Positions 1 through 27,115 of a stretch of DNA of 27,115 nt are shown in pieces. Position numbers and translations under genes: made by a program. Numbering within the stretch: position 1 is the stretch's first letter; every line of letters starts with the position of its first letter. The notes under the pieces are model-generated. The model was not told where the DNA came from. It searched no databases and saw only the letters and a program-made list of their open reading frames with translations. This DNA comes from Octopus sinensis (Eukaryota): NCBI RefSeq assembly GCF_006345805.1, contig NW_021827558.1:1-27115 (forward strand), given 5' to 3'.

Positions 1-218
1 AACAAGGGGCATAGACAAGGATGGTCCAGAAGATTGTTTCGCCTGTGACACGTGTGGGATTATAACTTTGTTTATGTTTCTACGGAATGTGTTATAATCA
101 TAATTAAGTATAACTTCTCTTTATTGCTTGCAAAACGTGGACGTGATTCTCTCGGAGTACACTTCCGACAATAAGGTCTATTTATGTGTACTCACTCGAT
201 TCGATCAGGCCAACGTTG

Positions 219-242
219 ATTATTATTATTATTATTATTATT
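219..242 (-). repeat. (ATT)8 microsatellite = (TAA)n 3' tail of the adjacent RTE-like element
   Basis: Eight perfect ATT units about 20 bp after the stop codon (264) of the minus-strand RTE C-terminal ORF. Confidence 0.8.
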
Positions 243-1468: not shown

Positions 1469-1469
1469 T

Positions 1470-1863
1470 GATTGATGACATTAAATGTTATTTATTTTAT
1501 TTTTTAAATGTTTTTATTTATCGAATTAAATACAATAAATTATCACGCACGTTATATTATTTTCGTTTTGTGCATGTATGCAGTTAATTCTTATTTTATT
1601 TTTTCGTGCTTTTATGTTTTTATTTTATAATTTTTTTGTTTTTTTATTTGTTTGACTATTAATTAAATTGATTACTGGTAAAATATCTTGCATAAAGTAT
1701 ATTTTGCAAGTGAATTTGTATTCATTTTATCAATTAATTAATATGCATTCATACAGACATTTTTAAATTTATTTCTCTTTAGTATTCTATTGTTTATTTT
1801 GATCTTTTTATTATTCTGATCCTATTCTATTATTCTGATCCTATTCTATTATTCTGATTTTTC
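1470..1863. repeat. RepA copy 1 (subtype A1), unclassified T-rich repeat with 2.5 copies of a 19-nt unit TTATTCTGATCCTATTCTA at 1811-1858
   Basis: Aligns by eye with 14207-14564, 20555-20993 and 23263-23702, starting GACATTAAATGTTATTTATTTT. Confidence 0.9.
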
Positions 1864-2698
1864 AATACACTCAACCCTCTCAAATTGGCTATTTTTGGGC
1901 CTTTCAATTTTGTTGGCAAATTAGATGATAAAATCGATAATTTTTCAAAGAAACTACTTTAATATGTCATGGTCGGCTCATATGGGTGGGCGACACGTAT
2001 GGCCCTACCCATTACATGCTTTTACATGGAAGAGCTTTATAAAATGTCAACGGTTTTTAGAGCGGACCCGGTTTTTGGAAGGACCACAGAAAAAAATTGT
2101 ATAAATCGTTTTATTTTATCCTGAAAATAGTTATATAATAAATTAGACCATGTTTAAATAATTTCTTAAGCTGTTTCTGATTTTATCATTGCTCACAAAA
2201 CCAACATACCCTTCAAAAGTGCTTTTTAAATTTTAAATAAGTATATTTTATTTGAAAAAAAAAAAAAATTGATTCACGTTACATTTTTATACAGATTTAT
2301 CATGTTCCATTAGAAAATAATTCAAAAACAAATGTAAAATATGTGAAAACCACAATCTTTTAACTTTTTTGCTTTAGTGACTGGTATATATAAATACCAG
2401 TTCCTTTGATAAACAGTCCTTGGATGAATCATTCCATTCCAAATGAATCAAAATCTTTCTTGTCAAAGCCTTGAAATTGTTCGTTACCTACTTCTTCGAT
2501 TCTTTGACCAAATTTTGAATTTGCGCATTTTTCGTCATTTTTTATTATATAATGTGACCGGTCGAAAATGAGATACGGCTAAATACGAGCCGTTAAAAAA
2601 TCGATAGTCAATATACCGATAAAAAAAGCCAATTGACAAAATGGCAAACGGCGCGTACTAATGATTGAACCTTTAATCTTTTAAAAAATGAAGTTTTA

Positions 2699-4460: not shown

Positions 4461-4601
4461 TTTTGATTAAACAGAAAAAAATTGCTGAACAACTTTTCTT
4501 GATCATATTCGGGAATAATTTTAGAAGATCTTTGTTCCTGTTATCACTTAAATAATCTTATTTAAATTAATTTGTAAGAAATCTTTAAATTTCGATTAAG
4601 C

Positions 4602-5923
4602 TATTCTAGCCTCGCTAAGTCTCTGCTATTTTCTTGTATCACAGTACCATCTTCTGCCTCGAGATCAACAACATCCTGTGGCAGATACTCCTCTAAATAT
4701 TGTGAATGTATCAATGTGCTCATTTAAGGCACTTTTCCGTGTTTTTTTATTATTGTCAAGATACAACCCTCCTGACAACTCGATCGCCGATGTTAAAAAT
4801 GGAAATATCATTCTTCCAGGTTCTTTTTCCTAACATTTTTCTTTCGGCATGGTCTGAATTCGAAATTGCTTTCGTTCTCGTGGTTTCATCATTCAATGAC
4901 CAAACCATGCAAGATATTCAGTTGCTTCACTTTGTGTTTCTTTATTCCCCGAATCAATTTGGTGGAATATTTCATTCATTTCGTTTTCTGAGTAGTGATT
5001 ATTAACGGTGTCATCGGCAGAAGCTCCAAACATCAATTCGAATGGAGCGTGCAAAGTGGTCGAATGCTGGACAGAATTATACGACTTGTAATTTCTTCGA
5101 TGATATCGATCCATCTGAATTCAAATTCTTTGAAAAGCACGTAGAAGAAATCATGAACTTCAATGTCTGATTCAGACGCTCTACTTGTCCCTGCACCCAT
5201 GGACACCTAGGACGCCCTCTGACGTGTTTTATACGATATGTTGAGCATAAATCGACTTTTTTTCGTTTACGAATTTCTTGCCATTGTCTGTGTGCAAAAT
5301 GGTTGGTTTTCCAAACATCAGAATTATACTTTTTATTGCACCTGACACCTCCATGGCCGATTTAGTCTTTAGAGGTCTTGTCCAACAAAATTTAGAAAAA
5401 AATCCAACCCAACCAAAAGCCAGCAAAAATTGTCATTGGCATTTGAATAATGCCGTAGATCACTAAAAATCAAAAATATATCTTATATTAGAGTAGATAA
5501 CTACTACCTTTCTCTGACTGTATATGCTCTGATAGGTGTTATACTTGGTCGAATGTTCATAAGTCGTCTTGCAAGACATTGTGGACAAGACCTGAGAACA
5601 AGCATAACTTCATCTCTGCAAGATCCATAGACTAAATTCTTTAAAAGAGAAAGAAGTCTATCACGACCAGGATGTCCATTTTTGAGGTGAACATTTTCAA
5701 TAAATATCCTCTGCTGTTAATCCTCTTCCACAGCGAACACATGCAAAAGAATTCCACTTGTTTTGAAACAAAATAATTGATCCGGCGAGGAGTCTATTAA
5801 TCTGAATAAGGATGTAGTTCTTATAAAATTTCGCTTCTCCTTTAGCAAATTGGATTGTATATTTGATATTTCAGATAGGTTAATTTCTTGCTTTTGTAGC
5901 AGATTGAAACGGACAACCTTCAT
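4602..5923 (-). pseudogene. Ginger-a integrase-like transposase (HHCC zinc finger + DDE core + C-terminal domain), disrupted
   Basis: HLKNGHPGRD...CPQC; D-x-x-D-L motif after removing 5482-5507; HTDNG; GRPRCPWVQGQVERLNQTLK; FNIGDRVVRR. One premature TAA and several frameshifts. Confidence 0.85.
5482..5507 (-). other. Candidate 26-nt spliceosomal intron (GTAGTAGTTATCTACTCTAATATAAG), phase 2
   Basis: Removal gives GAA AG|A TAT ATT TTT GAT (E-R-Y-I-F-D), colinear with D-R-Y-I-A-D of the paralogs. Contains CTAAT near the AG. A separate 1-nt slip remains in the following T run. Confidence 0.65.
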
Positions 5924-6246: not shown

Positions 6247-6827
6247 TTAATTAAGAAAATTTAACCGGTCCGAAGTGAACCCCGCAACATAATTGACGTT
6301 GCGTTTGCCTCTCACGATAGCAACGGAGATCAACTGGAGAAGCCACCGGGTCTCACGTGTATCGTGGCTTTTTAATGTGGCTAAGCGTCCAAGCTTCTTT
6401 AGGAAGCGAAGCGATTTCCCACTTATTCCTCCAGTTGTCTCGACCACAATCGGACAGAACACGAATCGATCTCGCAGCGCTTCATATTTTCTCTCCTTCG
6501 CCCTCATCGTTTTTTTTGCGGCATACAGTCTGTCCACTGCGCTCCCGGCAATGTTGGACGGGCAGAGAGTGTCCACACAGGTTGCGTCCTAGACTAGGGG
6601 TTTCCCCTCTTCAAATGGGAAAATTGTGATCTAATCAGGACGTTTTCCATCTCCTCGGTCAAGCCCGACCGGTTCAAGTACGGCCGGGTATCCTGCAGAC
6701 TCCAGGGCTCGCTTGACAATTTCGTTGATCGCCTTGTGTCTTGGAAATCGTCCTGCACTTCTTCGACAAGAGAGATCATGGTGTCCTAACAATCGACGGT
6801 GGCCCCACAACGGCATTTGTGAGTACT
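6247..6827 (-). mobile_element. CRE-like RLE retrotransposon 3' fragment (zinc knuckle + RLE endonuclease)
   Basis: HKCRCG...GHHDLSC...[61 protein letters not shown]. Two in-frame TAG stops. Confidence 0.85.
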
Positions 6828-7624
6828 AGTAAACTATAAATCAAATAAAACAATGATTTTTAAAATTCAAAAATTAATCATTCAACAAGTCTACCTGAAA
6901 ACTAACTCAATATTTTATGAATTTATTATTAAATTTTCTAACATAAATCAAAATATTCAAATAAACAAAGATTTTTTAGTTTTCTTTGAATCAAGAATGT
7001 TGATTTTTCATCCAAAAAATATTCTTATATAAATGGACTTATCTCTGTTCTAATACTAATTTCCTATTCTGTTCTAATACTATTTTTTAAACGTTTATCT
7101 CTTTTAAAATTAAATTAATTTGTGATTAGTATTTTTATATTTTCTAGTATATTAATATTAAAAAAAAATTTGACTTATAATTTCTTCAAAAAATCGTAAA
7201 TAAAATTCGTCGGAATAGCCAGATGGTCATAGGTCTTGATGAAAATCTGTCCCCGCTTTTACGAAAAAGCACACGTGCATGGTTGTCGATGAGTCGACTG
7301 ATCGCAGTCACTCGCCCTCCAGTTCTGTAGATAATCAATCGTTTTCCGTGATTCCCTTAGTACTAAAGCTGACGTAAGAATTTTCTGCTTCTGTCTCCTT
7401 TTTGGTCACCTCAATGCTTGTTCTTTTCTTATTTTTTAAAAACGGATTGTTCATTTTTATGAGATTATTATTATTTAAGCCAAACAAAATCACCGTCTTA
7501 ACCATTAACTAACACGTTCAGATAAAAATTGAAAGAATTCAAATGAGGGTTCGACACTTTTACAAATTTCCCAAACTTGTTATTTATATATTTAATTATT
7601 TGTTTATAAATAACTTTGATTATA

Positions 7625-8097
7625 TTATAATAAAATTTTTTTTTTCGAAATAGAAAAGAAAATGGAACAGGAAGTCAGCTACTAGCCGCAGAGAGAATAG
7701 AGAAACTGTTCCCCCTGAGTACGGCTATTGAGACGCGCTCAAAAAGCCGATTGACCTCGCGGGGGTCGTTTCTGATCCTCCCGAGGTGACGGCCTCTCTC
7801 GGTGAGAAAACGTAGCGTGGCTGGGCCGAATGTGCCTGATGTTTCGACTGAAACAGGCACAAAGAAGAATCTGTCGGCGAGCGAGGCGTACTTGTCTTTC
7901 TTCTGGGTCTCTGCCATCCTCGCCGCTGTGCCAGCTTCGATCGCGGACGCGAGAAAGCATGTTGACGCAAAAGTGTCAGAGCATGTCGCGTCCCAGACGA
8001 TCGCTTTGCCGCACTTGAACGGGATGAGCGAGACGCCGTCCGGCCTCTTGCCATCGCCCCTGTTAAGGCCAGAGGGCTCCAGCTGGCACGTATGACC
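7625..8097 (-). mobile_element. CRE-like RLE retrotransposon 3' fragment; RLE domain in one open frame, followed by a T-rich UTR and A tract
   Basis: [42 protein letters not shown]...KYASLAD...VETSG...ERVSIAVLRGNSFSIL*. Confidence 0.88.
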
Positions 8098-8519
8098 TTT
8101 TATAATAAAATATCTGGTAAACCTAATGTAATTAGATAACCACGTTGCAACTTACAATGCTTTTGTTGTGGATTCAACAAATTTTGTTTTCTTAATAATT
8201 TTATTTGTTTGTTGTTGTGCTTTATCACTTTTATTTATCACTTTTTATTCTTGTATATTAATGTTTAATGTATGTATTAAAATCGATTAAATATATTGTT
8301 GACTTACAGAATTCCTTATAGTATTCGATATTCTGTAATATAATTGGTTTTATTTTGACAATAATTTAATCTTTTTAATGCTAACGATTTAATACTTTTT
8401 GGATATTTTCCAAAACCCTATTTTTTCGTATTTTCATGTTTATTAAGATTGTATTTTGTTGTATTTTTGGGCAAAAATAACAACTCGATATCTGAGCATT
8501 GTATATATGTCGTAAACTA

Positions 8520-8683: not shown

Positions 8684-9315
8684 CAGTGCTGGTAGAAAAA
8701 AACCGGTTTTGCAGTTAATAATATTTTTTGGCGCATAGCTATTAATTTTCTAAATGAAATTTATTTTTTTTATTTTTTATTTATTGAATGAAATGAAATG
8801 AAATAAAGAGTTTGAAGTTGATTATATGTATAACTTTTTTTACTTTTAAAAAATTTCAATAATCGGCGGAAATTTTAAAAATTTAAATTTTTGCTTGTGA
8901 ATAAAAAACCGGTTTTAAACAAAAAGAGTTAACAAAATCAACAGTTAATATGTTGTGTTGTATCCCGATTAATAAATAGCTCGTATGACCTTTTAGGCAT
9001 ACTATCAATTAACATCTGAATACTTTCACGACGCAATTCGTTCCAAATTTTTGTTAATTTGACTTCCAGATCCAGTTTATTTTTTGCAGGATCTAAAGAA
9101 TACTTCTGCTTCATCATGCTCCAAACATGTTCCATTGGGTTCATGTCTGGAGATTGCGGAGCCCAATCAAGAATTGGAACTTTATTTTCTTCAAAAAACT
9201 TGGTTGTCAATGCAGATTGATGACAGGGAAACAAATCTTGTTGGAAAGTGAACTGATTTAGTCCCATTTTTCGCGCCGAAACGAACAAATTATTCGTTAT
9301 AACTAGGGCAACCAC
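8684..9315 (-). mobile_element. Tc1 3' half with one TIR
   Basis: TA|CAGTGCTGGTAGAAAAAAACCGG terminus; AAAAAACCGGTTTT repeated at ~8696 and ~8903; FQQD...WAPQSPDMNPMEHVW...SMPKR. Confidence 0.85.
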
Positions 9316-9442
9316 AAAGTTGACCTAAAAAAAGCACAAATTGACTTCCATAAAGTCAACAAAATTGATTCAAAAAATGAAAGTTGACCAGAATGTAGAC
9401 CTAAAAAAAGTTTTTCAGGTAATTTTTATGCAATAATTTTTT

Positions 9443-12124: not shown

Positions 12125-14037
12125 CAGTAAAACCTCTCGAATCCGCCAAATTTGGGACCTGGGAAATTACGGCGGATTCGAGAGACAAATTTGAATATTT
12201 TTATAGACTAATTAAAAAATGAAGACATTAATTTCTGTAAATATAGTCAGTTATTTTAGTTTTAATATTTATTTTGATGTTTCTACTAACATCATCAAGG
12301 TGATTGAAGACATTTAAATTAGTTTCATCCTTTTGTTTGAAGTACTTCCTCAATGTATGGAGAGCATTCAAAGCATCGTGGTCTAAAACGACTTGTCCAT
12401 TCTTTTTTTCTCCACAATCAATGTCCTCATCATCATTTTCATCCAAATTGTCCAGGATCTCTTCATTCTCTTAGAATTTTGTAAATAGTCACGTGTTACC
12501 AATGTTCTCCCTGGTATTTGAATGTACGTACAAACGGAATATTTATGGGCAAATTTGTCACCGACTGTCGACTAATTGGGAGGACTATACATGTTCCGTT
12601 GATAAGGGGCAGTACTCGGGGGAATACTCGTATATCAAAAAACTTTTTTCGCATTTGAGGGCAAAACTTTCTTGGACTATTAAGTGGCCATTCAAGCCTA
12701 TTCATGCACCACTAAAACCCAAAAAAATTGTTTTTTGAAGAAATTAATTAATATATTATTAATATCTTTTTTGCTTTTCAATTTGATAAATCGTCGTAAC
12801 TAAATCTGTCTTTCCTACAGATTGGCATCTTAAAAGAAATTTATAATTTTTTATTAAAATTTTTTTTTACATATATTTTTTTTAAAAACGAAATTATCAT
12901 ATTTGAATCTGTATTTAGTATTTAATTAGCAGCAGAGGATAAGATGGAATGGCAATTCCCACGCAAGATGGCTATTGATATGCGTTGAAAAAGCCATGTC
13001 CGTTCCCGATGATCATTTCTTCTTCTGCTTGCCAAATCCCCCAGTTTATAATAAGAAAAACTTAGAATCCATCCATGCTTTTTTTGAATTATGATAGGTC
13101 ACAAAACTTCGATAGCTAAAATTTTTAAAGCATCTAGGATTTTTGAATTTTCCAATTATGAATGGTGTTAGTTTATCGGTACCAGTCATATTTGAACAGA
13201 ACATTATCGATATTCGATCCTTCAATAATTTATGCCCATATCTCTTGATCTTGCAAATGCTTTTACATGGAAGAACTTTATAAAATAATCCTGTCTCATC
13301 TGCATAATAGACATTTTCGCGACCATATAATTTTATTTTTGCTCTTATATTAATGAGAAAATCATTAACTTCAGAATTTGAGAAATTCTCTGTAGAAGAT
13401 TCTCCATAAAGTTTCTTCAATTTTAACCCATGTCTTCTTTCAAATTTTTTAAGCCATCCACGACTGGCTTTAAACTCAGTTATTTGACGTTTCTTCGCAA
13501 AGTCTTCAGCCTTTGTAAGAATAATCGAATCATTAAGAATTGCTCCTCTGGTTTCCATCATTTGAATCCAGACATATTATCTTCATCAATTTAATTGAAC
13601 TTTAAATATGGATTCCGAGATAATTCTGAAAAAAGCAAGGCAGATACATTCCTTCTGCTCCTAAGGTCGTTTAAGGATCGTCTTGGAATAACGCGTCTGA
13701 ATCTTTCGGAAAAGATAGCGGACACGCTTGTAAGCGAAATCCCTGGATTTTGATCGATAAATTTAATAATTTGTTCATCTTCGGAATTTTTCAATCTGGT
13801 ACAATTACGTTTCATTACAATTAACAGGACCAACCACACAATAAGATGATAATGTCTCGTGTAAAAGTGTTTTTGAATTTAAAAAAATAATAATTAAGAA
13901 AATAACAAATATATATTTCTAAAAATGCGGCGGATTCGAGAAATTGGCGGATTCGGGAATTTCTCATAGGAAATTTCGTATTCTTGTAAAAAATTCGGCG
14001 GATTCGAGAGGTGGCGGATTCGAGAGGTTTTACACTG
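12125..14037 (-). mobile_element. Tigger/pogo transposon with both TIRs; catalytic core interrupted and partly lost
   Basis: TA|CAGTAAAACCTCTCGAATCCGCC and GGCGGATTCGAGAGGTTTTAC(AC)TG. GGCGGATTCG motif at 12171, 13929, 13946, 13997 and 14013. CENP-B-type HTH (FKASRGWLKKFERRH), YADETGLFY, KDRISIMFCSN, KKAWM. C-terminus at 12228-12490. Confidence 0.9.
12911..13047 (-). mobile_element. 5'-truncated CRE-like 3' end at the break point of the Tigger ORF
   Basis: KLGDLASRRRNDHRERTWLFQRISIAILRGNCHSILSSAAN* begins where the Tigger frame stops (13046). Confidence 0.8.
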
Positions 14038-14740: not shown

Positions 14741-15420
14741 TCATTTTTGAAAATTATTGATTAATGAAGAGAGAAGGATGTCATTTATTAGAGAGGCCAA
14801 AGATTCGGATGCCAGCGGCCGGGCAACCTTAGGGATTTTTCCGAGCACAAAGCGGCTGCGGCGGAGCGAGGAAATTGCGAGGAGGAGGACATCTTCTTCG
14901 GAAAATTCGTCCAGGCAAATAGCGTCCGCGGGGGTTTCCGAGAGGAGATTTTTGGATTTCTGCGAGGCTGAGGTAGGCAAGAGGGACATAGCCAGCATTT
15001 TAGTGCCATAGCCTCGCGTTTACGGATATTTAGGCAATACAGGTGGAAATACTCATCGCAAGAGGAGCAGCGAAGTGCGTTCTTTCTGGGGGCTGAAGAC
15101 AGGCAATGCCTGCAAAGTGTAGGTTCACGAAGGAAACAACTGGGTGGTTGTGAAGCTTTGGGTGTCATGGATATAAGAAAAAAAACAGAATGAGTGAAAT
15201 GAAATGAAAAAAGAGTAAGAGAGGATAGGAAAGATAGAAATGGGGCTAAGAGTGAAAGTAAGAGGTAATAAAGAGATGGAAAGATGAGAAAAAGTGAACA
15301 AAGATACAAAGGATGAATACAATAGAAAAAAAGGACTACAGAATTACAATGAAAAAGACACCACCACAACGATGAGTATGAGTACAAAATTCCCCACTGT
15401 TTAATATCCTCAGAAGGCAT
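14741..15420 (-). mobile_element. 5' part of a CRE-like retrotransposon: pyrimidine-rich leader, PHD finger (14977-15114) and N-terminal helical region
   Basis: CRHC-x11-CSSC-x4-HLYC-x15-CPSC with a WLC motif. Then SSLRRSRFVLGKIPKVARPLASESLASLIND, homologous to the N-terminus of the RT-bearing copy at 17043. Confidence 0.75.
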
Positions 15421-16330
15421 TGATTAATTATTATATTGTTTATTATATTTAGAGGGTCTCCATTTTAAAATAATCAATTTTTCATTTTAAAATAGTAATA
15501 GTAAACTTTTAAAATTTGAGATATGAATATTCTAACGTAAAAAGTCAATTTCGAAAGACAATCTTACTCAAACCCTAATTGTTGCAAGTCAATTTGATAC
15601 TGTTCCCTATGCGGCCTGCGGCCGCAGTGTATTTGACTCGGATTTTATGATTAATACGATCTTTAATACTTTCTGATTACACTTTCTAGTGTTACGCGAA
15701 CTCTAAATAACAGTTTTATTAAAACTTAATTAAAAAACCCCGTATACGACACAATGCAAAACATTAAAAGTTTCAACTATTTATTTTAAAATTTTAGAAA
15801 GTCTCGAGATATTAACATTTTTGATTACATTTTTTTCCATATCTTCTAGATCATAATTATGAAATTCTTGATTAATCACTGTATACATATTTGTTTGTAG
15901 TTCATCATACAAAGGATACTTTCTGTTTGAAACATTTCCATCATAATCATGTCTAATAATCACTTTATCTCCCACGTTTATATTTTCCTCATCATATCGC
16001 CATTTTCTTTTTTTCTTCATTTTCTCGCCTGCTTTTTGAAGATTTTCCAGAATCTTCATATTCTGCTGGTCATCTTCCGAGCATTCATTTTTTTCGTAAT
16101 TTATTTCTTCTTCTGGATCAGTTCCATCGAATGCCATTAATGCATTTATTTCATTTTCGTCTGGTCTTTTTTTAATTCCCATAAAACTTCGAAAAGGAAT
16201 ATTCTTGGTCGTGTCATGTTTTGTTCGATTGTAATCATATACGATCCTCTTTATAATGTTGAAGTAAACTCCAAAACTTCCAGCTGAAGCACTTGTTGAG
16301 GATATCCACCGTTTAATTGATTGGTTGAAC

Positions 16331-16356
16331 CTTTTTATTATAGCTTTAAAATAAAC
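16331..16356 (-). other. Candidate 26-nt intron (GTTTATTTTAAAGCTATAATAAAAAG), phase 2
   Basis: Removal converts VERFILKL* into VE-R|FNQSIKRWISST, colinear with VERLNQTLKFMISST in Ginger-a, and opens the frame through to the stop at 15781. Confidence 0.8.
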
Positions 16357-16761
16357 CTTTCAACTTGTCCTTGTACCCAAGGTGCTCTAGGTCTTCCACA
16401 GATATGCTTTATTTTAAAAAATTCACACAGCTTATCCATTTCAGAATTGCGAAACTCCCTTCCGTTATCAGTTTGGAGAATGACGGGTTCTCCAATAACG
16501 TAAAAAATATTCTCAAGTAGAGATGAAATTTCCAATGCACTTTTATTCTTTGCTAATTTTACAACAGCATACTTAGTAAACGAATCAATGACCACTAGTA
16601 AACGAACCTTCATATAAATAATTATTTAAGTTTCCCCACGAGTTTGATCGATTTATTTCTAAATATCTTCTGAGATCTATAAGATCTGCGATATAACGGT
16701 CTCTAGGACCTCTGGCAATGATTGGAGTGATAGGTGGCTTGGTTGCCATCAATTTTTTGGA

Positions 16762-16787
16762 CTAGCTAATAAATAAATAGCCAATAC
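16762..16787 (-). other. Candidate 26-nt intron (GTATTGGCTATTTATTTATTAGCTAG), phase 0
   Basis: Removal gives CVYCQ|SKKLMATKPPITP, with the same spacing as CPQCLARRLMNIRPSITP in Ginger-a. Confidence 0.8.
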
Positions 16788-16907
16788 TTGACAGTAAACA
16801 CATTTGTCTAAAACAAAGCGGATATCTTCTCTCATTATGTTATAGAAAGTATTCCTCCACATACTACTAAGTCTATCTCGGCCAAAATGGTTTTTATTAT
16901 GCTCAGA

Positions 16908-16930
16908 CTTCAATAAAGCAGATAAACTAC
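16908..16930 (-). other. Candidate 23-nt intron (GTAGTTTATCTGCTTTATTGAAG), phase 0
   Basis: Removal gives KIIE|SEHNKNH, matching FIENVHLKNGH of Ginger-a. Without splicing, the upstream frame has stops. Confidence 0.72.
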
Positions 16931-16969
16931 CTCAATTATCTTTAATTTCAGTTCCTTATCTTTATGCCT

Positions 16970-18337
16970 CCTCCCGAACTGCACCCCACTCCCTGGTTCC
17001 CCTGAACCCTCTAAACAGACAACTAGTGCTAGTGCTCATCAATTGGTTGTCAACTCATTCCTCATCAAACTGTCCAGCTTCCGAAGTTCTTTGAAAATCA
17101 CCCTTCGCATTCTAAAGTCAGCAAGGATACAAGTTTCCAAATGTCTTATTTCCTTTATAAACGATACGCTCGCGTCCAACAGTTGGGAGGCATGGTCTTG
17201 TCTAATCTGTTTTGCCCCACTGGCGCTCGGAAACTTCATCCGCACTGGGAAAAATCCACCTTCTCTAGCAGAATTGATTAAAGAGAACAACAACAGAATT
17301 TTTTCGCACTCAATAACAACTTTGCCCGATGTTGATCGCAAGCAATCCCCAAATAAGAAAAAGAAAACCCCACAGTGCCTTGAGGACACACTGAATGATC
17401 TTGTTCGTGCCAAACGAGCCGAGGGTGACGTCCGGGCTGCCATATGCACAGTCTCAAACGACGGCACAGTGTTAAAACCAACTCCTGAGATCCAAACACC
17501 CGAATCCTCTTCCTGATCTGCGGCCTCTGTGTCTTGCACGCTCAACCCATCAAAAGATGAAATCAAGTTCTCAATTCAATCTTTTGGCAAATGTACTTGC
17601 GGCGGACTTGATGGCCTCCGCCCGGGCCACATCAGTGACCTCACCTCTCCCTCAATTGGCGAGGCAGGCAACTCTCTGATATCCGCTATAGCCGCCTTAG
17701 TCGGTAAGATACTAAACGGGGATATCCCCTACTATGCGAGGAACATTCTCCTCTCAGCACATCTACTTGCATTCCAGAAGAAGGATGGCGGAATCCGTCC
17801 CATAACAGTCAGAAATTACTTCCGCCGCCTGATTGCTAAATTGGCCTCGAGGATCGTATGTCCCCGCTTAAGTACCAAATTTGCTCATCTTTGGTAACGA
17901 AATCGTCCACTTCCAGACAGGAGTTCAGCAGGGAGACCCGCTTGGGCCCCTCCTCTTTGAACTTGCAATCGATGATGCAGTGCACTCTGTTGAATCTCCG
18001 TTCAATCTATGGTACTTGGATGATGCCTCGGTTTGTGGATCTATCGAGGATATATTCAACGATCTTCCACATCTAATCCCTACCATCAAACACCTTGGGC
18101 TTGAAGTAAATGAAGAAAAATGTGAGCTCATGAATGGTAACTACCCGCTGGCAAATTTTCTCGACTCAAAAAAGCCCACAACCGATCTCATCTCAGGCAA
18201 TCAGACTATCAGCATGTCAGAGGCTGCATTCCTTGACTGCCCTCTAAGCCCATCTGGCCTAAGGGTCCATCTGGCCAAGAAGGACATGGAAGTCTGTAAT
18301 CTCACAAGCAGACTCTTGGAGCTAGACTCGCACATTG
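16970..18337 (+). mobile_element. CRE-like retrotransposon N-terminal + RT fragment with an internal deletion
   Basis: RAKRAEGDVRAA, GGLDGLRPGHI, KKDGGIRPITV..YFRRL, GVQQGDPLGPLLF, WYLDD, GLEVNEEKCEL. Stop at 17516 and a deletion at ~17880. Confidence 0.88.
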
Positions 18338-18829
18338 ATGTGACCCCAAAGGGGAGATCCTGAAAGGTTTTATTTATCACAGCGAAAATAATCTGAATGA
18401 ATTCTTTGGTAATAAAATTATTTAAAATTGGCCAAACACTGGAAAGTATTTAACCAATAAAAATACGGGGAAATATTTATGTATTGTTTTGCTCGAATGA
18501 CATTTTCAAGAAAAATGTAATAAGGACTGTCTTGTGGAGGACTCTTTTTATTATCCGATAGCTATAGTAAATTGTATTCTTGCTCTGCGATTATCTATTG
18601 GTAATCATTTTATTCTTAAATAAGGAAACCGAGTTTGAAGTATCCTGCGCTAATTGGTTGAGCTCATTTTGGGCATGTTTTGAGACGGTTCCTAAACCCA
18701 CTTATCTTAGGTACTGCATTAATTCTGCTTCTTTGGATTTTGTGAAAGAAGACAAATAATTACATTTCTGTCTAATTAGTTTTCTAACATTAAAAAATTG
18801 ATTTCTTTTTATAAAATGAATCTCGAATT

Positions 18830-19189: not shown

Positions 19190-19335
19190 AGAGTCTAAAC
19201 GATCTTTCGAGGTAATTCTCATTTCGATTAAATCAATTTTTTTTCCTATTGTCATTAACGAAAATATCAGGTTTATTGAATTGAACTTTCGTTTCAGTCA
19301 TAATTGACGTGTCAAATCTCATTTCGTGTAAAAAG
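19190..19335 (-). mobile_element. R4/NeSL-like RLE endonuclease fragment, opposite orientation to 18830-19175
   Basis: EMRFDTSIMTETKVQFNKPDIFVND, then IDLIEMRITSKDRL (PD...D-x-E catalytic motif). Close nucleotide match to ~23076-23128. Confidence 0.75.
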
Positions 19336-19550
19336 GTAGATTTTACTTCTTCCTTTTCTATACAAAAAAATCTGAGTAAGCAATTGTTTTTTTGAATAAA
19401 TTCCTTTCCGTCAGAGAATTCAAAATTTTTTGTGTTAATTTTCAATCTGTTTTTCACTTTTTCAATCATTTCATTAAGATCCCTAAACTCTTTGATTTTT
19501 TAAATTTTTTGAAGATTTGCTTTTGAAAGTACAACGAAACCCATTTTTAT

Positions 19551-20530
19551 ATTATTATTTAACCCCTGGAACACAGAAAAGAGGAATAGTAATTGTCTAA
19601 TTAAGTGATCCCGGTGTCAGTGCGTCTCCTTTTATCTTTTCCTTATCTCGAATTCTTAATCAATGTCCAAAGGGTAAGGTTTTTTTTCATTTTCTAACAC
19701 AATTCTTATAGGCAAGATACTCCTCTTCAAGGGGACCTCCGGTAGATCTTTCCATTGTTAAGAAGATGTGCTGTCATAAATAACGTCCCACATGATTGTT
19801 TGGGCAATGGATGGGGCAGCTAGAGTTATATCAGGTGACGTTCGGGAGTCACCATTTCTGGAAGTTCTTGTATGTTTGTTCCGGTCGTTCAGAATTAACA
19901 AGTTGTCAATCTGTCCAATATTATAGATCCTCTTTGGTCCAATCGTTGGTTTTTATACCATAGGAGGCTTTTTGCATTCAAATCCCCGCAAATTAATATT
20001 TTTTTCAATTTTGTAAAATCTTCAAGTTTAGGACGATATCCTCTATAACATGAAGACGCAGGAGGTATATATATCGTCATCCGGAAGGATCTTAAACTTA
20101 TTTTCACTGTGATTTGTTCTAAGGATCATCCATGTCCATAATGGCCGATATCTTGTTTGATAGGTCCATAACATTAATCTGATTGCGGATAAAGATTAGG
20201 AGGCCTCTACCTTTTCCAAGTTTTCGGTCTTTACGGAATATCCAGGGAAAGTTGGGGTTAAATCTTTCTGTGTAAGTTTTGACTCCTGAATTAAAGCAAT
20301 ATCCACTGAGTTGGACTGAAGAAATCGTCTAAGTCTCATAATCTTTGTTCGAATTCAATTGAGTTGACTTGGACATTAATCAAAGCTGTTTCTGAAATTG
20401 GTTTGACAACGCCAGAGATAAGTAGAAATGCACGACACCATCCACGTCTCCATGAAGAAGGGATAGGGAGTTTGCGGCTCTTTTTCACATTTATTGTGGA
20501 ATGCCACCACGTCGTAGGTGAGGCACGCCA
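19551..20530 (-). mobile_element. APE-type LINE remnant: AP-endonuclease domain, internal deletion, TAA-type tail
   Basis: IRTKIMRLRRFLQSNSVDIALIQESKL, RKDRKLGKGRGLLIFIR, YIPP, ICGDLNA, ILND...TSPDITL across frameshifts. 3' end GGGGTTAAATAATAAT. Confidence 0.8.
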
Positions 20531-21389: not shown

Positions 21390-21429
21390 ATTGTTTCAAA
21401 ATATAATCGAATATAGTATTAAATGTATT

Positions 21430-21750
21430 TGGTGTAAGATCGTCATAATTACAGCGGGAAGCAAGGAAATGGGCCTGTATCCCCCGGGGACATCATGAGG
21501 CATTCTGGGTTTTCCGATAAGGATTACCTCAGCCACTTTCCATATAGAGGGGATCGTCCCAAGTCGCAAGCTCCCGCTAAACAGGACCTGTAAGGCGGTG
21601 ATCAACAACGGAGGGGCCTTCTTAAAAATAGCCATAGGGATCCGGTCCAGACTCGCCGCAGTGTTTTTATTTTGGGAGATCGCTGCCAGAATCTCCGCTT
21701 CGGAAATATCGCCTGCATCGTTCCTTCATATGCCCAGCTGGCAGCGCTTG
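21430..21750 (-). mobile_element. APE-type LINE RT N-terminal fragment
   Basis: ISEAEILAAISQNKNTAASLDRIP...GTIPSIWKVAEVILIGKP..YRPISLL. Confidence 0.8.
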
Positions 21751-21779
21751 TCCCACGACAATATCTGCTGGACAGTATC

Positions 21780-22200
21780 AAAGGACGATGTCTCCGCGAA
21801 CTGGCTTCCGTCAGTTCCAAAGCGTAGACGGGAAAGAGGAATAGTTTTGCCCACGAAAGGGCGTCGGAGTGTTTTTTCGTGGCATTTCCAATCAAGGTGG
21901 CAAGACTCTCTGCAGCAAGTAACCTGACTTCCTTTGGAATCCTGACGGGGATGTACCTGTACCGTCGCAAAGCGGACAGATATCGCAGAAAATCCTCTGC
22001 ATCAGAGACGGGAAGGGCAAAGGGAGGTGGACACCATCCAGGAACTACGCACGAAGGGCAATTCCACGTCTGGAGGGCAGATGCCTGCTTCCCCTTGAGA
22101 CCAATACAAGAGAGATGGAAAAAATTCTCACAGGTCGAGCAATTAATTCCACGTTTTCCTCTTCGATTTCTTGCAAGAAAGGCATGTGGGATTATCTACT
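21780..22200 (-). mobile_element. Second PHD-finger CRE-like 5' fragment (PHD 22049-22184; not in ORF track)
   Basis: CLSC...(1-nt shift)...INCSTCENFFHLSCIGL...TWNCPSC, in frame with FLRYLSALRRYRYIPVRIPKEVRLLAAESLATLI. Confidence 0.78.
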
Positions 22201-22447: not shown

Positions 22448-22635
22448 CTAATAATCAGGAATTTCAATCTTTTAATTCCAAATATCTCCATAAGTTAATG
22501 AGATCGGCTATGTATCTATCACGCAGGCCTCTCGCAATGATTGCGTAATATGAGTTTTTGGTGTCATCAATCTCTTTGACTAATCGTCTTATTTTTATTA
22601 TTATACCTCACTAGAAAACATAATTTTACTAAGAT
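22448..22635 (-). mobile_element. Ginger-c transposase fragment (not in ORF track), close to Ginger-b
   Basis: SKRLMTPKTHIT(P)IIARGLRDRYIADLINLWRYLELKD*NS*LLA. Cut at the TA of the pogo terminus. Confidence 0.75.
22580..22606 (-). other. Candidate 27-nt intron (GTATAATAATAAAAATAAGACGATTAG) at the same position as 16762-16787
   Basis: Followed directly by TCA AAG AGA TTG ATG (SKRLM). The preceding TGTTTTCTAGTGAG reads C-F-L-C-E if one lost T is allowed. Confidence 0.65.
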
Positions 22636-22656: not shown

Positions 22657-23200
22657 CTAATTAAAAATCCAAATCTTCAGTGATTTCTTTTCTTCGCTTG
22701 GAAGAAGAGTTTTCCGTAAACTTCCTTTCATTTCTATTTCTGCGTCAATGATTTTATTCAACTGAGTGTCCTCACGACATGCCAGCTCCGCAAGTTGATT
22801 GGCGGCACAGGCGTACTCCTCGCTGTCTACCTTCATCCCATGTCTGTACTCGATAAGCATACTCTCTGGCGTCCTCTTAACCACAACCGACTGGATTTAT
22901 GTCCTCGTTTCTTCTTCAATGGATAACTTGTCCACATGACTTTTAAAGAACTTTGAGACAACTCCGTCTTATGTTAAGACAATTAAAATAATCTTCACTT
23001 TTGCTTCATTGAAAACCGACAGTTTGTTTGCAAACAAGTCATATTTGTGAAATTTCTCCATTTCAACTTGCTTTAAACGGTCTTGCGAGGTAATTCTCAC
23101 TTCGATTAAATCAATTTCCTTTTTCCTAGACAAAAACAGTTTTTAAAAACATTTTCAATCTCATTTCGAGTGAAACCGTAAATTTTTTCTGACAGCTGAT
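22657..23200 (-). mobile_element. R4/NeSL-like RLE C-terminal fragment with internal deletions
   Basis: KNLRFHS; EIDLIEVRITSQDRLKQVEMEKFHKYDLFANKL...LT*DGVV...IQSVVVKRTPES. Confidence 0.8.
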
Positions 23201-24393: not shown

Positions 24394-24579
24394 AAGTAAC
24401 CGGACAGCAAAATTTCCATTATTTTAAGTCATTTTAAAACTTTTTTCACATAAATCACCCTTTGTACTTAATTTACACGAAACATTTTTTACATTTTAAT
24501 TTTTTTTCAATTGTAACTTTTTTAGTTATAAATTTAATAATGTCAGTTATAAATTCAGAGAAGAGATTGATTTGAGAAA

Positions 24580-24990
24580 TCAATTGAGAAGCCCGCTGCT
24601 GATGGAAAGCGAGTTCCCTCGGAGTATGGCTATTCCGACCTTTGTCTTAGCCATACACCTTCACGGGATCATTTTTCTTTGTGGCGAGCTTCTTCCGAGT
24701 TCGCGCAAGAACTCGGCAGTCGCTGGGCCAAAGCTCTGATGACTCAGCCGCAACAGGTGAATCTGTAGCGGTCCCCGAGGAAGGAATATTTTTGGTTTTA
24801 AGGTTTTCCGCGATTGAGGCAGCTGCTCCAGTGTCTGAACCGATTTAAGGAGATTCGTGCTTGAGTAAGTATCGACGCAAGTTGCGTCCAGACCAAAGAT
24901 CGTCCGGAGTTAAAGGGAAAAGAGTCATCCCGTCAGGTCTCTTTCCATCACCTCGATCGAGACCCATGGTTCAAGCTGTGCTGGGAATTT
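24580..24990 (-). mobile_element. CRE-like RLE 3' fragment, frameshifted
   Basis: [24 protein letters not shown]...WDATCVDTYS...IAILRGNSLSISSGLLN*. Confidence 0.82.
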
Positions 24991-25039
24991 TTTTTTATTA
25001 TAAAATTTTTTTTTGTCAAAAATTGTTAATCAATTATTT

Positions 25040-26480
25040 TAGAATGACCTCAGGATAGCGTGTGAATTTCCGCGGACAATTGCACGCGAAATCCTCTGGA
25101 AGAGCCACGACGTCTCCCGCGGATCACCTGTTTTTTTTGGTGATTAGACCACCCAATCTTCGAATGAACGAAAAACTCTCTGATCCAAAGACTCCGGAAG
25201 TCTCCACAGCGATCTGCTGGAAAAGATATCTGTCTGCCAGGAAAGAGTATTTCTTTTTCTTCAACTCTTCAAACGTTTTGCAGCAGAGCCAGGAAAGGAT
25301 GCCCAACTTCCGAATGAAGAAGGTCCAAACGTGTCAGGGCAGGTAAAATCCCAAACAAGTGCTTTCCCTCTCGTGTACGGGTAGATGGTTACGCCGTCTG
25401 GGCGTTTGCCATCTCCTCTATCGAGACCAGCTGGTTCGAGTTGAGAGTGGAATCCGGCAGCGTCCATGGCCCTTTTGATGATGTCATTGCGGCGGAATGT
25501 CGGGGAAACGACCGGCGCTACGAGTGCAAGAAAGTGGGTGCCTTCCCAATGGACCAATCCTCTTTCCACATTTGCAGGGGTGTGGGGGTGCACATCGGTA
25601 AGCCGAGACGTAGACATAGGCCGATCCTAATGGTATCGTTGTCCAGTTTACAGCCGGTAGACGCAATAGGACAAGCGCTTATCCAGGAGCCAGAATTGGG
25701 TTGTGCACCCGATCTGAGACATATGATCCGTTCTTGGTCCATGCACAGTTCGATAACTTTGTAAGTCTCCTCTGCACCAGATTTCGTCCCAATGTCTCTG
25801 TGAAGATTCCACTTCGGGAATCTCAGACCATGACTGCTCCAAGACTCGAGCCGTTTTGCATCCACCGACACGGGGTACATTCATTTAAAGACTTGAGAAT
25901 GACGCCGATGAGGGGACCACAAAATGATCGTGAGGCCAAATAGGCTGGAAGAGCCAAGTCGGTAGGTGAACGGAGACCGATACCTCCAATACGAATAGGT
26001 AGGGAAGCTTGTTTCCATGCGAGATCATCAAGTTGCACATTACAAATAAGTTCGGCATGACGACGAATGATAGAGTCTATTGACCCAAGATGTTTAGGAT
26101 GAAGGAAACATGGAGATGAACGGAGGATATACAGAATTTTTGGAATGGATAAAAAATTCTTCAAGAGGAACAAGCCTTCATGTGCATCTAGCTGGGATAA
26201 CCGACTCGCTGCTTGTTCCATATTTGATGTCTTTTCCATCAAAATTTTTTCTGTTGCCTGACCGTGGAGAGGAGAGCCGAGAATAATAAGGTCTTCCTTT
26301 TGGGTTATTCTGATTTCAGGAATGAGTGAGGTAAAGTTTCTGTGGATTTCATCGAAAGAGGCCACGTAAAGATTAGTCAGCTCACACTTTGACGGATTCA
26401 AGGATAACCCGATGTGGCCGAGCCGAGAGGATATCATAAGGGCGTCTTTGAAGGCTGGAATCTGCTTTAGACGGTGCTCA
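25040..26480 (-). mobile_element. CRE-like retrotransposon 3' third (end of RT, thumb, zinc knuckle, RLE), frameshifted
   Basis: IGLSLNPSKCEL, ILGSPL, QASLPIRIGGIGLR, RLGLP, PCKCG..GRHPLSC, KRPDG..WDFTCPDT, VETSG, WLFQRISRAIVRGNSHAIL*. Confidence 0.9.
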
Positions 26481-26664
26481 CTCTTCATTAAGAAATGAAC
26501 GACAAAATAACGAAAAAACAAAAATTCTTATTAGTGATTTTACAATCAGTTTTATTTGAAGTGAAAACAGAATCGGAAAGAAGATTTGAAGCAGTAATTT
26601 GTACATTAAATTTAAAGCATAAATAATTAAGAGGTGCGACAAAAGAAACCGACAGACAAAAATA

Positions 26665-27115
26665 ATAATAATAAGTATCTAGAATTGCCTCCTTTGGCAT
26701 TATACACTGCGTAGCTTCTATCCTTCATTGGTAAAATTAGTTTTTGTATGAACTCTATCGGGATTGATCTCCAAATTTGGATAATTTCCTCTTTTAGGTC
26801 ATTGTGACATGTTGGGGTTTTTTCATCTATTTTTCTTTTCATATATGCCCAGACGTGCTCAATGGGATTGAGATCAGGTGACTGGGCCGGCCATGAAAGA
26901 ACTTTGATTTGATTTTCGTTGAAATATTCCGTCACAATTTTTGCTTTGTGGCAGGGAGCATTGTCCTGTTGGAATGTGAAATCCGTTAAATTCATTTTTG
27001 CTGCAGATTCTATCAGGTTATTCGTCAACAAATTCACATATCGTCCACTGTTTAACGTACCATCAAAAAAAACTAAATTCCCCCACTCCGTTGTATGAGA
27101 TGCATCCCAAACCAT
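26665..27115 (-). mobile_element. Tc1 DD34E transposase C-terminal part (continues beyond the window)
   Basis: FQQDNAPCH...WPAQSPDLNPIEHVW...KGGNSRY in one open frame. Confidence 0.88.

What the first reader, a model, noticed from the sequence alone, without database searches (positions are those of the whole stretch)
15781..16966. Ginger-type transposase split by a series of 23-26-nt GT..AG mini-introns
Seen: three AT-rich inserts of 23 nt (16908-16930), 26 nt (16762-16787) and 26 nt (16331-16356), each starting GT and ending AG, none a multiple of 3. Removing exactly these segments restores both frame and residue-for-residue colinearity with Ginger-a (IE|SEH vs IENVH; CQ|SKKLM vs CLARRLM; ER|FNQS vs ERLNQT), and the 3' half becomes one uninterrupted ORF to the stop. 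A fourth, weaker candidate (16608-16635, 28 nt) ends in AG and restores frame but starts GG. Known: introns have been described in some Ginger-type transposons; spliceosomal introns in this size class occur in only a few lineages (e.g. dicyemids, Paramecium, some microsporidia). Inference: this is an intron-dense DNA transposon adapted to an ultra-short-intron host with degenerate donors (GTAG, GTAT, GTTT). ORF-based annotation would wrongly dismiss such copies as dead pseudogenes.
Basis: partly seen in the sequence, partly recalled or inferred. Interest (0 to 1): 0.88.

Follow-up and report, generated by a model that had tools for sequence, protein, structure and literature searches.

The report
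Transposase gene with dicyemid-size mini-introns
A broken copy of a Ginger-type jumping gene is interrupted by four 23-28-base introns; this is the intron size typical of dicyemids (tiny octopus-kidney parasites), so the inserts are real introns and not decay, but they are what one expects for any gene living in such a genome.

Summary
On the minus strand, removing 16908-16930 (23 nt), 16762-16787 (26 nt), 16608-16635 (28 nt) and 16331-16356 (26 nt) joins five pieces into one 360-aa reading frame. That frame carries an H2C2 zinc finger and an intact D,D35E integrase core, and it is colinear with intronless relatives.

Evidence that the inserts are spliceosomal introns:
- A diverged copy (66% aa identity, dN/dS 0.14, synonymous sites saturated) lies on a contig filed as Octopus sinensis. 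It has inserts at the same four codon positions, with unrelated sequence and different lengths (27/26/32/33 nt), all GT..AG.
- Two more copies add further cases, and 9 of 10 inserts are GT..AG.
- The same octopus-labelled contig carries a conserved cellular gene (DCN1-like) that is only readable after removing five 23-30-nt GT..AG introns.

That contig is therefore most likely dicyemid DNA, and by inference so is the window. No RNA evidence was available.

This particular copy is dead. A LINE fragment cuts off its 5' end, and the donor of its third intron reads GG.

The element is a stand-alone KRBA2/Ginger2-like integrase transposase. No terminal repeats were found in the window. Interest is moderate: it is a new intron-bearing variant of a known transposon group in a known ultra-short-intron lineage.

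The parts
16931..16966 (-). Remnant of exon 1 (HKDKELKLKIIE). Homology and AT-richness stop upstream of it.
   Evidence: aligns with EDEVELREKTLE at the end of exon 1 of the L001 copy. GC rises from about 0.33 to 0.48 beyond 16967.
16908..16930 (-). Mini-intron 1: 23 nt, GT..AG, phase 0, between E12 and S13.
   Evidence: A 27-nt GT..AG insert sits at the same codon boundary in L001 12911-12937.
16788..16907 (-). Exon 2: H2C2 zinc finger (H15, H19, C48, C51).
   Evidence: Pfam Integrase_H2C2 E=3.4e-7. Nearly invariant columns in alignment A1.
16762..16787 (-). Mini-intron 2: 26 nt, GT..AG, phase 0, between Q52 and S53.
   Evidence: Same position in L001 13058-13083 (26 nt) and in window fragment D 22580-22606 (27 nt).
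16636..16761 (-). Exon 3: includes the first catalytic Asp (D78). It equals the exon that the octopus gene model XP_029656711.1 picked up.
   Evidence: The octopus-labelled protein matches from SLKLM to SFSW, exactly the exon limits.
16608..16635 (-). Mini-intron 3: 28 nt, GG..AG, phase 0, after W94. The donor is probably mutated.
   Evidence: L001 has a 32-nt GT..AG insert at the same place, 13210-13241. No equivalent placement gives GT. The window keeps 2 extra residues (VR) relative to homologues.
16357..16607 (-). Exon 4: DDE core with D141 and E177 (D,D35E spacing).
   Evidence: Pfam rve E=9.4e-13. Invariant D141 and N142/G143/E145, and the nearly invariant QG.VER block that contains E177, in A1.
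16331..16356 (-). Mini-intron 4: 26 nt, GT..AG, phase 2, inside codon R178.
   Evidence: Same position and phase in L001 13487-13519 (33 nt), and a 27-28-nt insert starting GT in L001 copy 2.
15781..16330 (-). Exon 5: C-terminal half, ending in the TAA at 15781-15783.
   Evidence: The end is colinear with the ends of uninterrupted homologues P0001/P0002.
15601..15627 (.). Candidate 3' terminus of the element: a GC-rich island TGTTCCCTATGCGGCCTGCGGCCGCAG containing the palindrome CTGCGGCCGCAG. Unproven.
   Evidence: There is only one copy in the window and no inverted partner. It resembles the GC-rich TIRs starting TGTCA of the intronless relative L002.
16967..18400 (+). GC-rich non-LTR retrotransposon fragment that replaces the 5' part of the Ginger gene.
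   Evidence: RVT_1 E=1.9e-9 at 17872-18360 (+). Composition; sequence.
4601..5923 (-). 'Ginger-a': a second, diverged family member. It is a pseudogene (one nonsense codon, about five 1-nt frameshifts) and lacks all four Ginger-b introns.
5482..5507 (-). Private mini-intron of Ginger-a: 26 nt, GT..AG, between RER and Y.
   Evidence: Removal gives RERYIFDF, colinear with RERYCFDL of P0004.
19323..19544 (-). Fragment C: exon 1 (MGFVVLSKANLQKI...STFLHE) of another Ginger-b-like copy. Homology ends at the exon 1 / intron 1 boundary.
   Evidence: Matches the start MGFVKLKASDLKII of the L001 copy.
22458..22606 (-). Fragment D: intron 2 (22580-22606, 27 nt, GT..AG) plus exon 3 of a third Ginger-b-like copy.
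23126..23192 (-). Fragment E: part of exon 2 of that same third copy. About 500 nt of inserted DNA separate it from fragment D.

Best explanation
Window 15781-16966 (minus strand) is the 3' four-fifths of the transposase gene of a Ginger2/KRBA2-like cut-and-paste DNA transposon. The protein is a stand-alone integrase-type enzyme with an H2C2 zinc finger and a D,D35E core.

The gene is split by four genuine spliceosomal introns of 23-28 nt. These are of the same class as the introns of cellular genes in dicyemids: median about 27 nt, AT-rich, with signals reduced to GTa...AG.

In an active family member the host spliceosome would remove them from the pre-mRNA to give a transposase of about 430 aa. 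Related intronless elements, and the sister family Ginger-a, lack these four introns. They were therefore gained in this transposon lineage (inference).

The window is most likely dicyemid genomic DNA: a repeat-rich stretch made only of transposon debris.

This particular copy is dead. A LINE fragment has replaced its 5' end, and the donor of intron 3 reads GG.

Shown: the anatomy, colinearity, positional conservation, purifying selection between copies, and the same intron class in a cellular gene on the related contig.

Inferred: actual splicing, the dicyemid identity of the window, and intron gain rather than loss.
For: **Gene and domains**
- Removing the four inserts gives a 360-aa ORF with Integrase_H2C2 and rve domains.
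- H15/H19/C48/C51 and D78/D141/E177 are all conserved.
- It is colinear with uninterrupted homologues from genomic contigs.

**Positional conservation**
- The copy at L001 12875-13811 has inserts at the same four codon positions and phases. They are 27/26/32/33 nt, all GT..AG, and intron sequence is not conserved (12-20 matching bases).
- Over 221 aligned codons, aa identity is 66% and third-position identity 49% against 80% at second positions. dN/dS is 0.14 with dS about 2. The two lineages therefore diverged as working genes while keeping the introns.
- Window fragment D adds a case at position 2, and L001 copy 2 adds one at position 4.
- Ginger-a has a different 26-nt GT..AG intron, and its other frame breaks are plain 1-nt indels.

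**Host intron class**
- A DCN1-like gene at L001 1506-2365 becomes a 241-aa ATG-to-TAA ORF only after removing five GT..AG introns of 30/27/23/28/26 nt.
- That ORF hits Pfam Cullin_binding at E=5.7e-19 (scored on the 220-aa partial spliced product) and human DCN1-like 2 at E=3.5e-28, colinear across the junctions.
- Transposon introns average 27.4 nt and 20.5% GC. The DCN1-like introns average 26.8 nt and 20% GC.

**Literature**
- Dicyema sp. has a median intron of 27 bp (PMC6543705).
- D. japonicum has 36.7% GC and 48.9% repeats, is LINE-rich, and its host is O. sinensis (PMC6736024).
- Among animals, introns under 30 bp are known only in myxobolids and D. japonicum, with a GTa...AG signal (PMC13644364).

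**Link between window and L001**
- They share the same Ginger family, a 197-nt stretch at 85% identity, and the same mix of transposon families and composition.
- A 234-aa RT fragment from the window finds no annotated octopus protein.
Against: - No transcript evidence. The spliced product has no near-identical protein in 5.8 billion sequences.
- The window contains no recognisable cellular gene. Its host is therefore inferred only through L001.
- L001 is deposited as Octopus sinensis.
- Apart from one 197-nt stretch, window and L001 share transposon families only at 35-70% aa identity. They need not come from the same species.
- One of the four inserts in this copy is GG..AG.
- No TIRs or target-site duplications were found for any copy in the window.
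Confidence: 0.72

Rival explanations
1. The window, and perhaps L001's transposons, are true cephalopod DNA. Ginger elements carrying dicyemid-type introns moved horizontally from the kidney parasite into its host, where they cannot be spliced and so decay.
For: L001 is filed under Octopus sinensis and carries a RefSeq gene model. All Ginger copies seen here are damaged. The window has no cellular gene to anchor it.
Against: L001 itself carries an intact cellular DCN1-like gene with five mini-introns. That argues for contamination, not transfer. The window holds at least three diverged Ginger lineages with mini-introns within 27 kb, which would need several transfers. The window's RT fragment has no annotated octopus relative.
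Confidence: 0.1
2. The host is a different ultra-short-intron organism, such as a myxobolid myxozoan, a microsporidian or a ciliate, and not a dicyemid.
For: Myxobolids have 22-27-bp median introns (PMC13644364). The closest named homologues of the transposase come from the microsporidia Dictyocoela and Nosema granulosis. The literature also lists ciliates and microsporidia as having short introns (PMC13644364).
Against: The only close relative lies on an octopus-derived contig, and octopus is the dicyemid host (PMC6736024). TAA ends both the transposase and the DCN1-like ORF, and neither has in-frame TAA or TAG, so a TAA/TAG-reassigned ciliate code is unlikely. The microsporidian homologues are only 38-45% identical and intronless. 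The window holds metazoan-type LINE, Tc1/mariner and pogo debris.
Confidence: 0.1
3. The inserts are not introns. They are chance insertions or assembly artefacts in a decaying pseudogene.
For: The copy is truncated and one insert lacks GT. Ginger-a shows that frame-breaking mutations do occur in this window.
Against: 9 of 10 inserts are GT..AG, against roughly 1% expected per insert. Positions and phases are identical in a copy whose synonymous sites are saturated. Every frame break in Ginger-b is a 23-28-nt AT-rich insert, whereas true decay in Ginger-a shows up as 1-nt indels and a nonsense codon.
Confidence: 0.03
4. The inserts are germline-limited DNA, like ciliate internal eliminated sequences (IES), removed at the DNA level and not the RNA level.
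For: The size class (about 26-30 nt) and AT-richness resemble the shortest Paramecium IESs (own knowledge).
Against: None of the inserts has TA..TA boundaries in any equivalent placement. The boundaries are GT..AG, and the genetic code is standard.
Confidence: 0.02

Closest known systems
Ginger2/TDD DNA transposons (Bao, Kapitonov & Jurka 2010, PMC2836005) and the KRBA2/SCAND3 integrase domain derived from them (PMC3575427)
   Same: A stand-alone Gypsy-integrase-like transposase with an H2C2 finger and a DDE core. The best named hits are 'KRAB-A domain-containing protein 2'. An intronless relative (L002) is a 2.3-kb element whose TIRs start TGTCA, which fits the Ginger TGTNR terminus. There are no OTU, Ulp1 or PHD C-terminal domains.
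   Different: The Ginger2 table in the 2010 paper has no intron column. This lineage has four introns, and its sister family has a different one, all under 30 nt. TIRs and 4-bp TSDs were not found for the window copies.
Intron-containing Ginger1 transposases (0-4 introns, mostly GT-AG; PMC2836005)
   Same: A transposase gene of the same superfamily, interrupted by up to four canonical GT-AG introns that are conserved between related elements.
   Different: Ginger1 is a different group, with a GPY/F motif and OTU/Ulp1 domains. Its hosts are Hydra, Aplysia, lancelet and aphid, with introns of ordinary size. I did not compare intron positions.
Dicyemid ultra-short spliceosomal introns (Ogino 2010 cited in PMC6543705; Lu 2019 PMC6736024; Hadjez 2026 PMC13644364)
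   Same: Length of 23-33 nt around a median of about 27, about 20% GC, and only GT(a) and AG conserved. A cellular gene on the related contig shows the same class.
   Different: Those studies describe cellular genes. My literature searches found no description of transposon genes carrying such introns.
Intronless KRBA2-like elements of the amphipod microsporidia Dictyocoela muelleri and Nosema granulosis, and of unnamed ENA/Logan contigs
   Same: 38-51% aa identity over most of the protein, and the same overall length of about 340-430 aa.
   Different: These are single uninterrupted ORFs on genomic contigs.

Membership tests
Ginger2/TDD DNA transposon | Integrase-like transposase with an H2C2 zinc finger and a DDE (D,D35E) catalytic core | tested here: met
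   Pfam Integrase_H2C2 and rve both score above their cut-offs. H15/H19/C48/C51 and D78/D141/E177 are conserved in A1.
Ginger2/TDD DNA transposon | Stand-alone gene with its own start codon; no adjacent RT, RNase H or LTR | tested here: met
   The L001 copy and window fragment C start with ATG (MGFV...) about 75 codons before the zinc finger. Intronless relatives are 340-430-aa ORFs starting with M. The only RT next to the window copy is an opposite-strand LINE fragment.
Ginger2/TDD DNA transposon | Terminal inverted repeats of about 50-180 bp with TGTNR termini | tested here: inconclusive
   No TIR pair was found around any window copy. The 5' end of Ginger-b is lost. There is one candidate 3' terminus, TGTTC... 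at 15601. The 43%-identical relative L002 does have TIRs starting TGTCA.
Ginger2/TDD DNA transposon | 4-bp (TDD: 5-bp) target-site duplication | not testable with these tools
   No complete copy is available. The flanks of L002 showed no obvious 4-bp duplication.
Ginger2/TDD DNA transposon | Closer to Ginger2/KRBA2 than to Ginger1 or Gypsy; lacks the Ginger1 C-terminal OTU/Ulp1/PHD domains | tested here: met
   Named hits are KRBA2-like, plus a Dictyostelium integrase protein. Pfam finds no extra domains. No phylogeny was made.
U2-type spliceosomal GT-AG intron | GT at the 5' end and AG at the 3' end | tested here: met
   3 of 4 in the window copy and 9 of 10 across copies. Intron 3 of this copy is GG..AG.
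U2-type spliceosomal GT-AG intron | Removal restores the frame and colinearity with uninterrupted homologues | tested here: met
   At intron 3 the window keeps 2 extra residues, while the L001 copy is exactly colinear.
U2-type spliceosomal GT-AG intron | Position and phase conserved between diverged copies while intron sequence is free to drift | tested here: met
   All four positions are shared with L001 at 66% aa identity and dN/dS 0.14. Intron alignments show 12-20 matching bases and different lengths.
U2-type spliceosomal GT-AG intron | Absent from mature mRNA | not testable with these tools
   No read data were available, and no near-identical spliced protein is in the protein collection.
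Dicyemid-type ultra-short introns | Length about 20-35 nt (median 27), AT-rich, signal reduced to GTa...AG; cellular genes of the same genome share the class | tested here: inconclusive
   Length, composition and ends match (PMC6543705, PMC13644364). Shared by a DCN1-like gene on L001. The window itself has no cellular gene, and L001's organism is inferred, not named.
Ciliate internal eliminated sequence | TA dinucleotide at both boundaries | tested here: not met
   No equivalent placement of any insert gives TA..TA.

The most novel reading that the evidence does not exclude
The window is cephalopod chromosomal DNA, and the Ginger copies are parasite-to-host transfers from dicyemids. The donor's 23-33-nt introns would mark them as such: a transposon 'passport stamp' that dates and directs horizontal transfer between an animal parasite and its host.
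Probability: 0.08. Interest if true: 0.8.

Novelty: new variant of a known kind. Interest (0 to 1): 0.45.

Why it matters
**Annotation.** In dicyemid-type genomes, transposon genes, like cellular genes, are unreadable to ORF-based or default splice-aware tools, because their minimum intron settings exceed 30 nt. Repeat and gene censuses there will undercount intact transposases.

**Intron evolution.** Two sister transposon families with disjoint intron sets (four versus one), plus intronless relatives elsewhere, give a dated and countable record of intron gain. The lineage is one whose introns are at the lower size limit for animals.

**Database hygiene.** At least one contig of the public Octopus sinensis assembly, and the RefSeq protein XP_029656711.1 built on it, probably derive from the octopus's dicyemid parasite.

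Tried and rejected
**Database look-ups**
- Exact look-ups of two window ORFs found nothing.
- The last homologue search, with the DCN1-like protein, returned no hit because the protein is too divergent for the word index. PDB and Pfam comparisons replaced it.
- The homologue search with a window RT fragment gave only unnamed ENA hits at 39-49% identity. One of them (L008) shares no DNA or Ginger similarity with the window.
- The metagenome scan for relatives gave only 26%-identical loci.
- Rfam and tRNA scans of the window and L001 found nothing.

**Search for cellular genes and other mini-introns in the window**
- Pfam on 70 unassigned ORFs of at least 40 aa found no cellular gene.
- The mariner and pogo copies show ordinary 1-nt frameshifts and no mini-introns.
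- I considered a permissive 'spliced-ORF' finder and dropped it. GT..AG pairs are too frequent in AT-rich DNA for it to discriminate.

**Terminal repeats**
- TIR searches around Ginger-b, Ginger-a and L001 copy 2 were negative or ambiguous.
- A 41-nt, 78% inverted match (15681-15721 versus 18410-18447) is too weak to call.

**Intron 3**
- Alternative GT..AG boundaries do not restore the frame. The GT-started candidates are 32 and 45 nt, and a length of 1 mod 3 is needed (read).

- Whole-frame translations could not be passed to Pfam.
Full report
**Observation.** The gene lies on the minus strand.
- 16908-16930 (23 nt, GT..AG)
- 16762-16787 (26 nt, GT..AG)
- 16331-16356 (26 nt, GT..AG)
- 16608-16635 (28 nt, GG..AG)

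Without them, the pieces in three different frames join into one stop-free frame of 360 codons, ending at the TAA at 15781-15783. The product has Pfam Integrase_H2C2 (E=3.4e-7) and rve (E=9.4e-13) domains, both above their curated cut-offs.

**What the gene is.** A search of 5.8 billion proteins gave 24 relatives.
- The best hits (38-51% identity) are uninterrupted ORFs of 340-430 aa. They come from unnamed ENA/Logan contigs and from the microsporidia Dictyocoela muelleri and Nosema granulosis, with source names such as 'KRAB-A domain-containing protein 2' and 'Pro-Pol polyprotein'.
- In the alignment (A1) the zinc-finger residues H15, H19, C48, C51 and the catalytic D78, D141, E177 (35 residues between the last two) are conserved.
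- Junctions 1, 2 and 4 are colinear residue for residue. At junction 3 the window product has two extra residues (VR).
- One relative, L002, is a complete 2.3-kb element with GC-rich terminal inverted repeats starting TGTCA, which fits the TGTNR terminus defined for Ginger elements (PMC2836005).
- KRBA2-type integrase domains are assigned to the Ginger2 clade (PMC3575427).

I therefore file the element as Ginger2/KRBA2-like on protein evidence. No TIRs or target-site duplications could be found for the window copies.

**Are the inserts introns?** The key evidence came from one weak-looking hit, the Octopus sinensis protein XP_029656711.1 'craniofacial development protein 2-like'.
- This protein matches the window only from SLKLM to SFSW, which is exactly exon 3.
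- Its contig, VCDQ01012456.1 (29 kb fetched as L001), holds a Ginger-b-like copy at 12672-13811.
- That copy has inserts at all four positions, at the same codon boundaries and phases: 12911-12937 (27 nt), 13058-13083 (26 nt), 13210-13241 (32 nt) and 13487-13519 (33 nt). Every one is GT..AG, including the position where the window copy has GG.
- Over 221 aligned codons the two copies are 66% identical in protein. Identity is 80% at second codon positions and 49% at third positions. dN/dS is 0.14 with dS about 2, i.e. saturated.
- The homologous introns differ in length and share only 12-20 bases.

Long divergence under purifying selection, with intron positions and GT/AG ends kept while intron sequence drifts, is the signature of introns that are spliced.

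Further cases:
- Fragment D in the window has a 27-nt GT..AG insert at position 2 (22580-22606).
- A second, internally deleted copy in L001 has a 27-28-nt insert starting GT at position 4.
- Ginger-a (4601-5923) lacks all four but has its own 26-nt GT..AG insert at 5482-5507. Removing it turns RER**LSTLI*D into RERYIFDF, colinear with RERYCFDL of the Dictyocoela protein.
- The remaining defects of Ginger-a are a nonsense codon and about five single-base frameshifts. Ordinary decay in this window therefore looks quite different from the inserts.

On chance: GT and AG frequencies are 0.046 and 0.070, and each insert has 1-8 equivalent placements. A random insert would have a GT..AG placement about 1% of the time. 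Nine of ten do.

**Which host?** The window contains no recognisable cellular gene. Pfam on the larger ORFs finds the following:
- reverse transcriptase at 913-1491 (-) and 17872-18360 (+)
- Tc1/mariner DDE_3 at 8941-9324 (-) and 26630-27115 (-)
- a pogo-type transposase at 13049-13576 (-)
- a PHD finger at 14791-15423 (-)

Seventy unassigned ORFs gave nothing.

L001, however, carries a cellular gene. At 1506-2365 (+), a 241-aa ATG-to-TAA frame appears only after removing five GT..AG segments of 30, 27, 23, 28 and 26 nt.
- The 220-aa partial spliced product hits Pfam Cullin_binding (E=5.7e-19).
- The full 241-aa product hits human DCN1-like protein 2 (E=3.5e-28), and the alignment runs straight across the junctions.
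- These host introns average 26.8 nt and 20% GC. The ten transposon introns average 27.4 nt and 20.5% GC.

Among animals, introns under 30 bp are documented only in myxobolid myxozoans and in Dicyema, with the splice signal reduced to GTa...AG (PMC13644364). Dicyema sp. has a 27-bp median (PMC6543705). D. japonicum lives in O. sinensis, and its genome has 36.7% GC and 48.9% repeats, with many LINE copies (PMC6736024). The simplest reading is that VCDQ01012456.1 is dicyemid DNA in the octopus assembly.

The window is tied to that contig in three ways:
- It has the same Ginger family with the same introns.
- It shares a 197-nt stretch at 85% identity (19551-19747 versus L001 28985-29182).
- It has the same mosaic of GC-rich LINE pieces in an AT-rich background, plus hAT, pogo and mariner debris at 35-70% aa identity.

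A 234-aa RT fragment from the window has no annotated octopus relative. TAA terminates both ORFs and neither contains in-frame TAA or TAG, which argues against a ciliate with those codons reassigned. I put the dicyemid origin of the window at roughly 0.75-0.8. It remains an inference.

**State of this copy.**
- Homology stops at about 16966. Upstream lies a GC-rich LINE fragment on the other strand.
- About the first 70-80 codons are therefore missing. They are present in the L001 copy and in fragment C at 19323-19544.
- Intron 3 starts GG, and no equivalent placement or alternative GT..AG pair restores the frame.
- The copy is thus a dead member of an intron-bearing family.

**Intron history (inference).** Genomic relatives are intronless. 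Ginger-a and Ginger-b have disjoint intron sets, and a more distant copy in L001 reads VERFNQT without interruption. Gain of four introns in the Ginger-b lineage and one in Ginger-a, inside an ultra-short-intron host, is the most parsimonious account. Most junctions have AG|G or G|G exon context.

**Rivals.**
- Horizontal transfer into cephalopod DNA is not excluded for the window (about 0.1). It is disfavoured by the intact mini-intron cellular gene on L001 and by the several diverged Ginger lineages within 27 kb.
- Another short-intron host has a probability of about 0.1.
- Chance insertions or artefacts are about 0.03.
- IES-like DNA elimination is about 0.02, because there are no TA boundaries.

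**Novelty.** Ginger1 transposases with up to four ordinary introns are known (PMC2836005). Dicyemid mini-introns are known. Searches for transposon genes with such introns in dicyemids found nothing. I rate this a new variant of a known kind, of moderate interest. It is useful for annotation practice, as a record of intron gain, and as a flag for a probable contaminant contig and chimeric RefSeq model.

Noticed in passing
L001 1506-2365 (contig VCDQ01012456.1 of GCA_006345805.1): A contig deposited as Octopus sinensis carries a DCN1-like gene with five 23-30-nt GT..AG introns, so it is probably dicyemid contamination. The RefSeq protein XP_029656711.1 on it is a chimera of a LINE endonuclease ORF and one Ginger exon.
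   Followed up: yes
window 4601-5923 (-): Ginger-a is a decayed sister family.
   Followed up: yes
window 22458-22627 and 23126-23192 (-): A third Ginger-b-like copy is split by about 500 nt of foreign DNA. The insertion is flanked by the similar strings AAAACTGTTTTTGTCTAG (23126-23143) and AAAATTATGTTTTCTAG (22611-22627), which look like a diverged target-site duplication.
   Followed up: partly
window 19208-19237 and 23086-23115 (-): The same unidentified repeat begins (ATTGATTTAATCGAA.TGAGAATTACCTCG) just downstream of a Ginger fragment at two separate places. Fragment C loses Ginger homology exactly at the exon 1 / intron 1 boundary, 85 nt before this repeat. Unexplained.
   Followed up: no
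window 19551-19747 vs L001 28985-29182: This is the only long nucleotide match between the window and the octopus-labelled contig (85% over 197 nt). It lies beside a LINE endonuclease-like stretch. The element it belongs to was not identified.
   Followed up: partly
window 15601-15627: A GC-rich island, TGTTCCCTATGCGGCCTGCGGCCGCAG, contains a perfect 12-nt palindrome (a NotI site) in otherwise AT-rich DNA, 154 nt 3' of the Ginger-b stop. It may be the element's terminus.
   Followed up: partly
window 1-1500, 6250-8150, 14750-15420, 16967-18400, 21400-22200, 24500-26530: LINE-derived pieces stand out at 45-49% GC against a 22-35% GC background. Two carry an N-terminal PHD finger (14791-15423 and 21605-22195, both on the minus strand).
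   Followed up: partly
L001 22806-23380 (-): An internally deleted Ginger-b-like copy: the first 30 or so codons are joined directly to about residue 115, as in non-autonomous derivatives of cut-and-paste transposons. It still has the intron-4 insert.
   Followed up: partly
L002 (Logan SRR26596599 contig, 2342 nt): A complete intronless relative (413-aa ORF) with GC-rich TIRs starting TGTCACCGTCC. No obvious 4-bp target-site duplication.
   Followed up: partly
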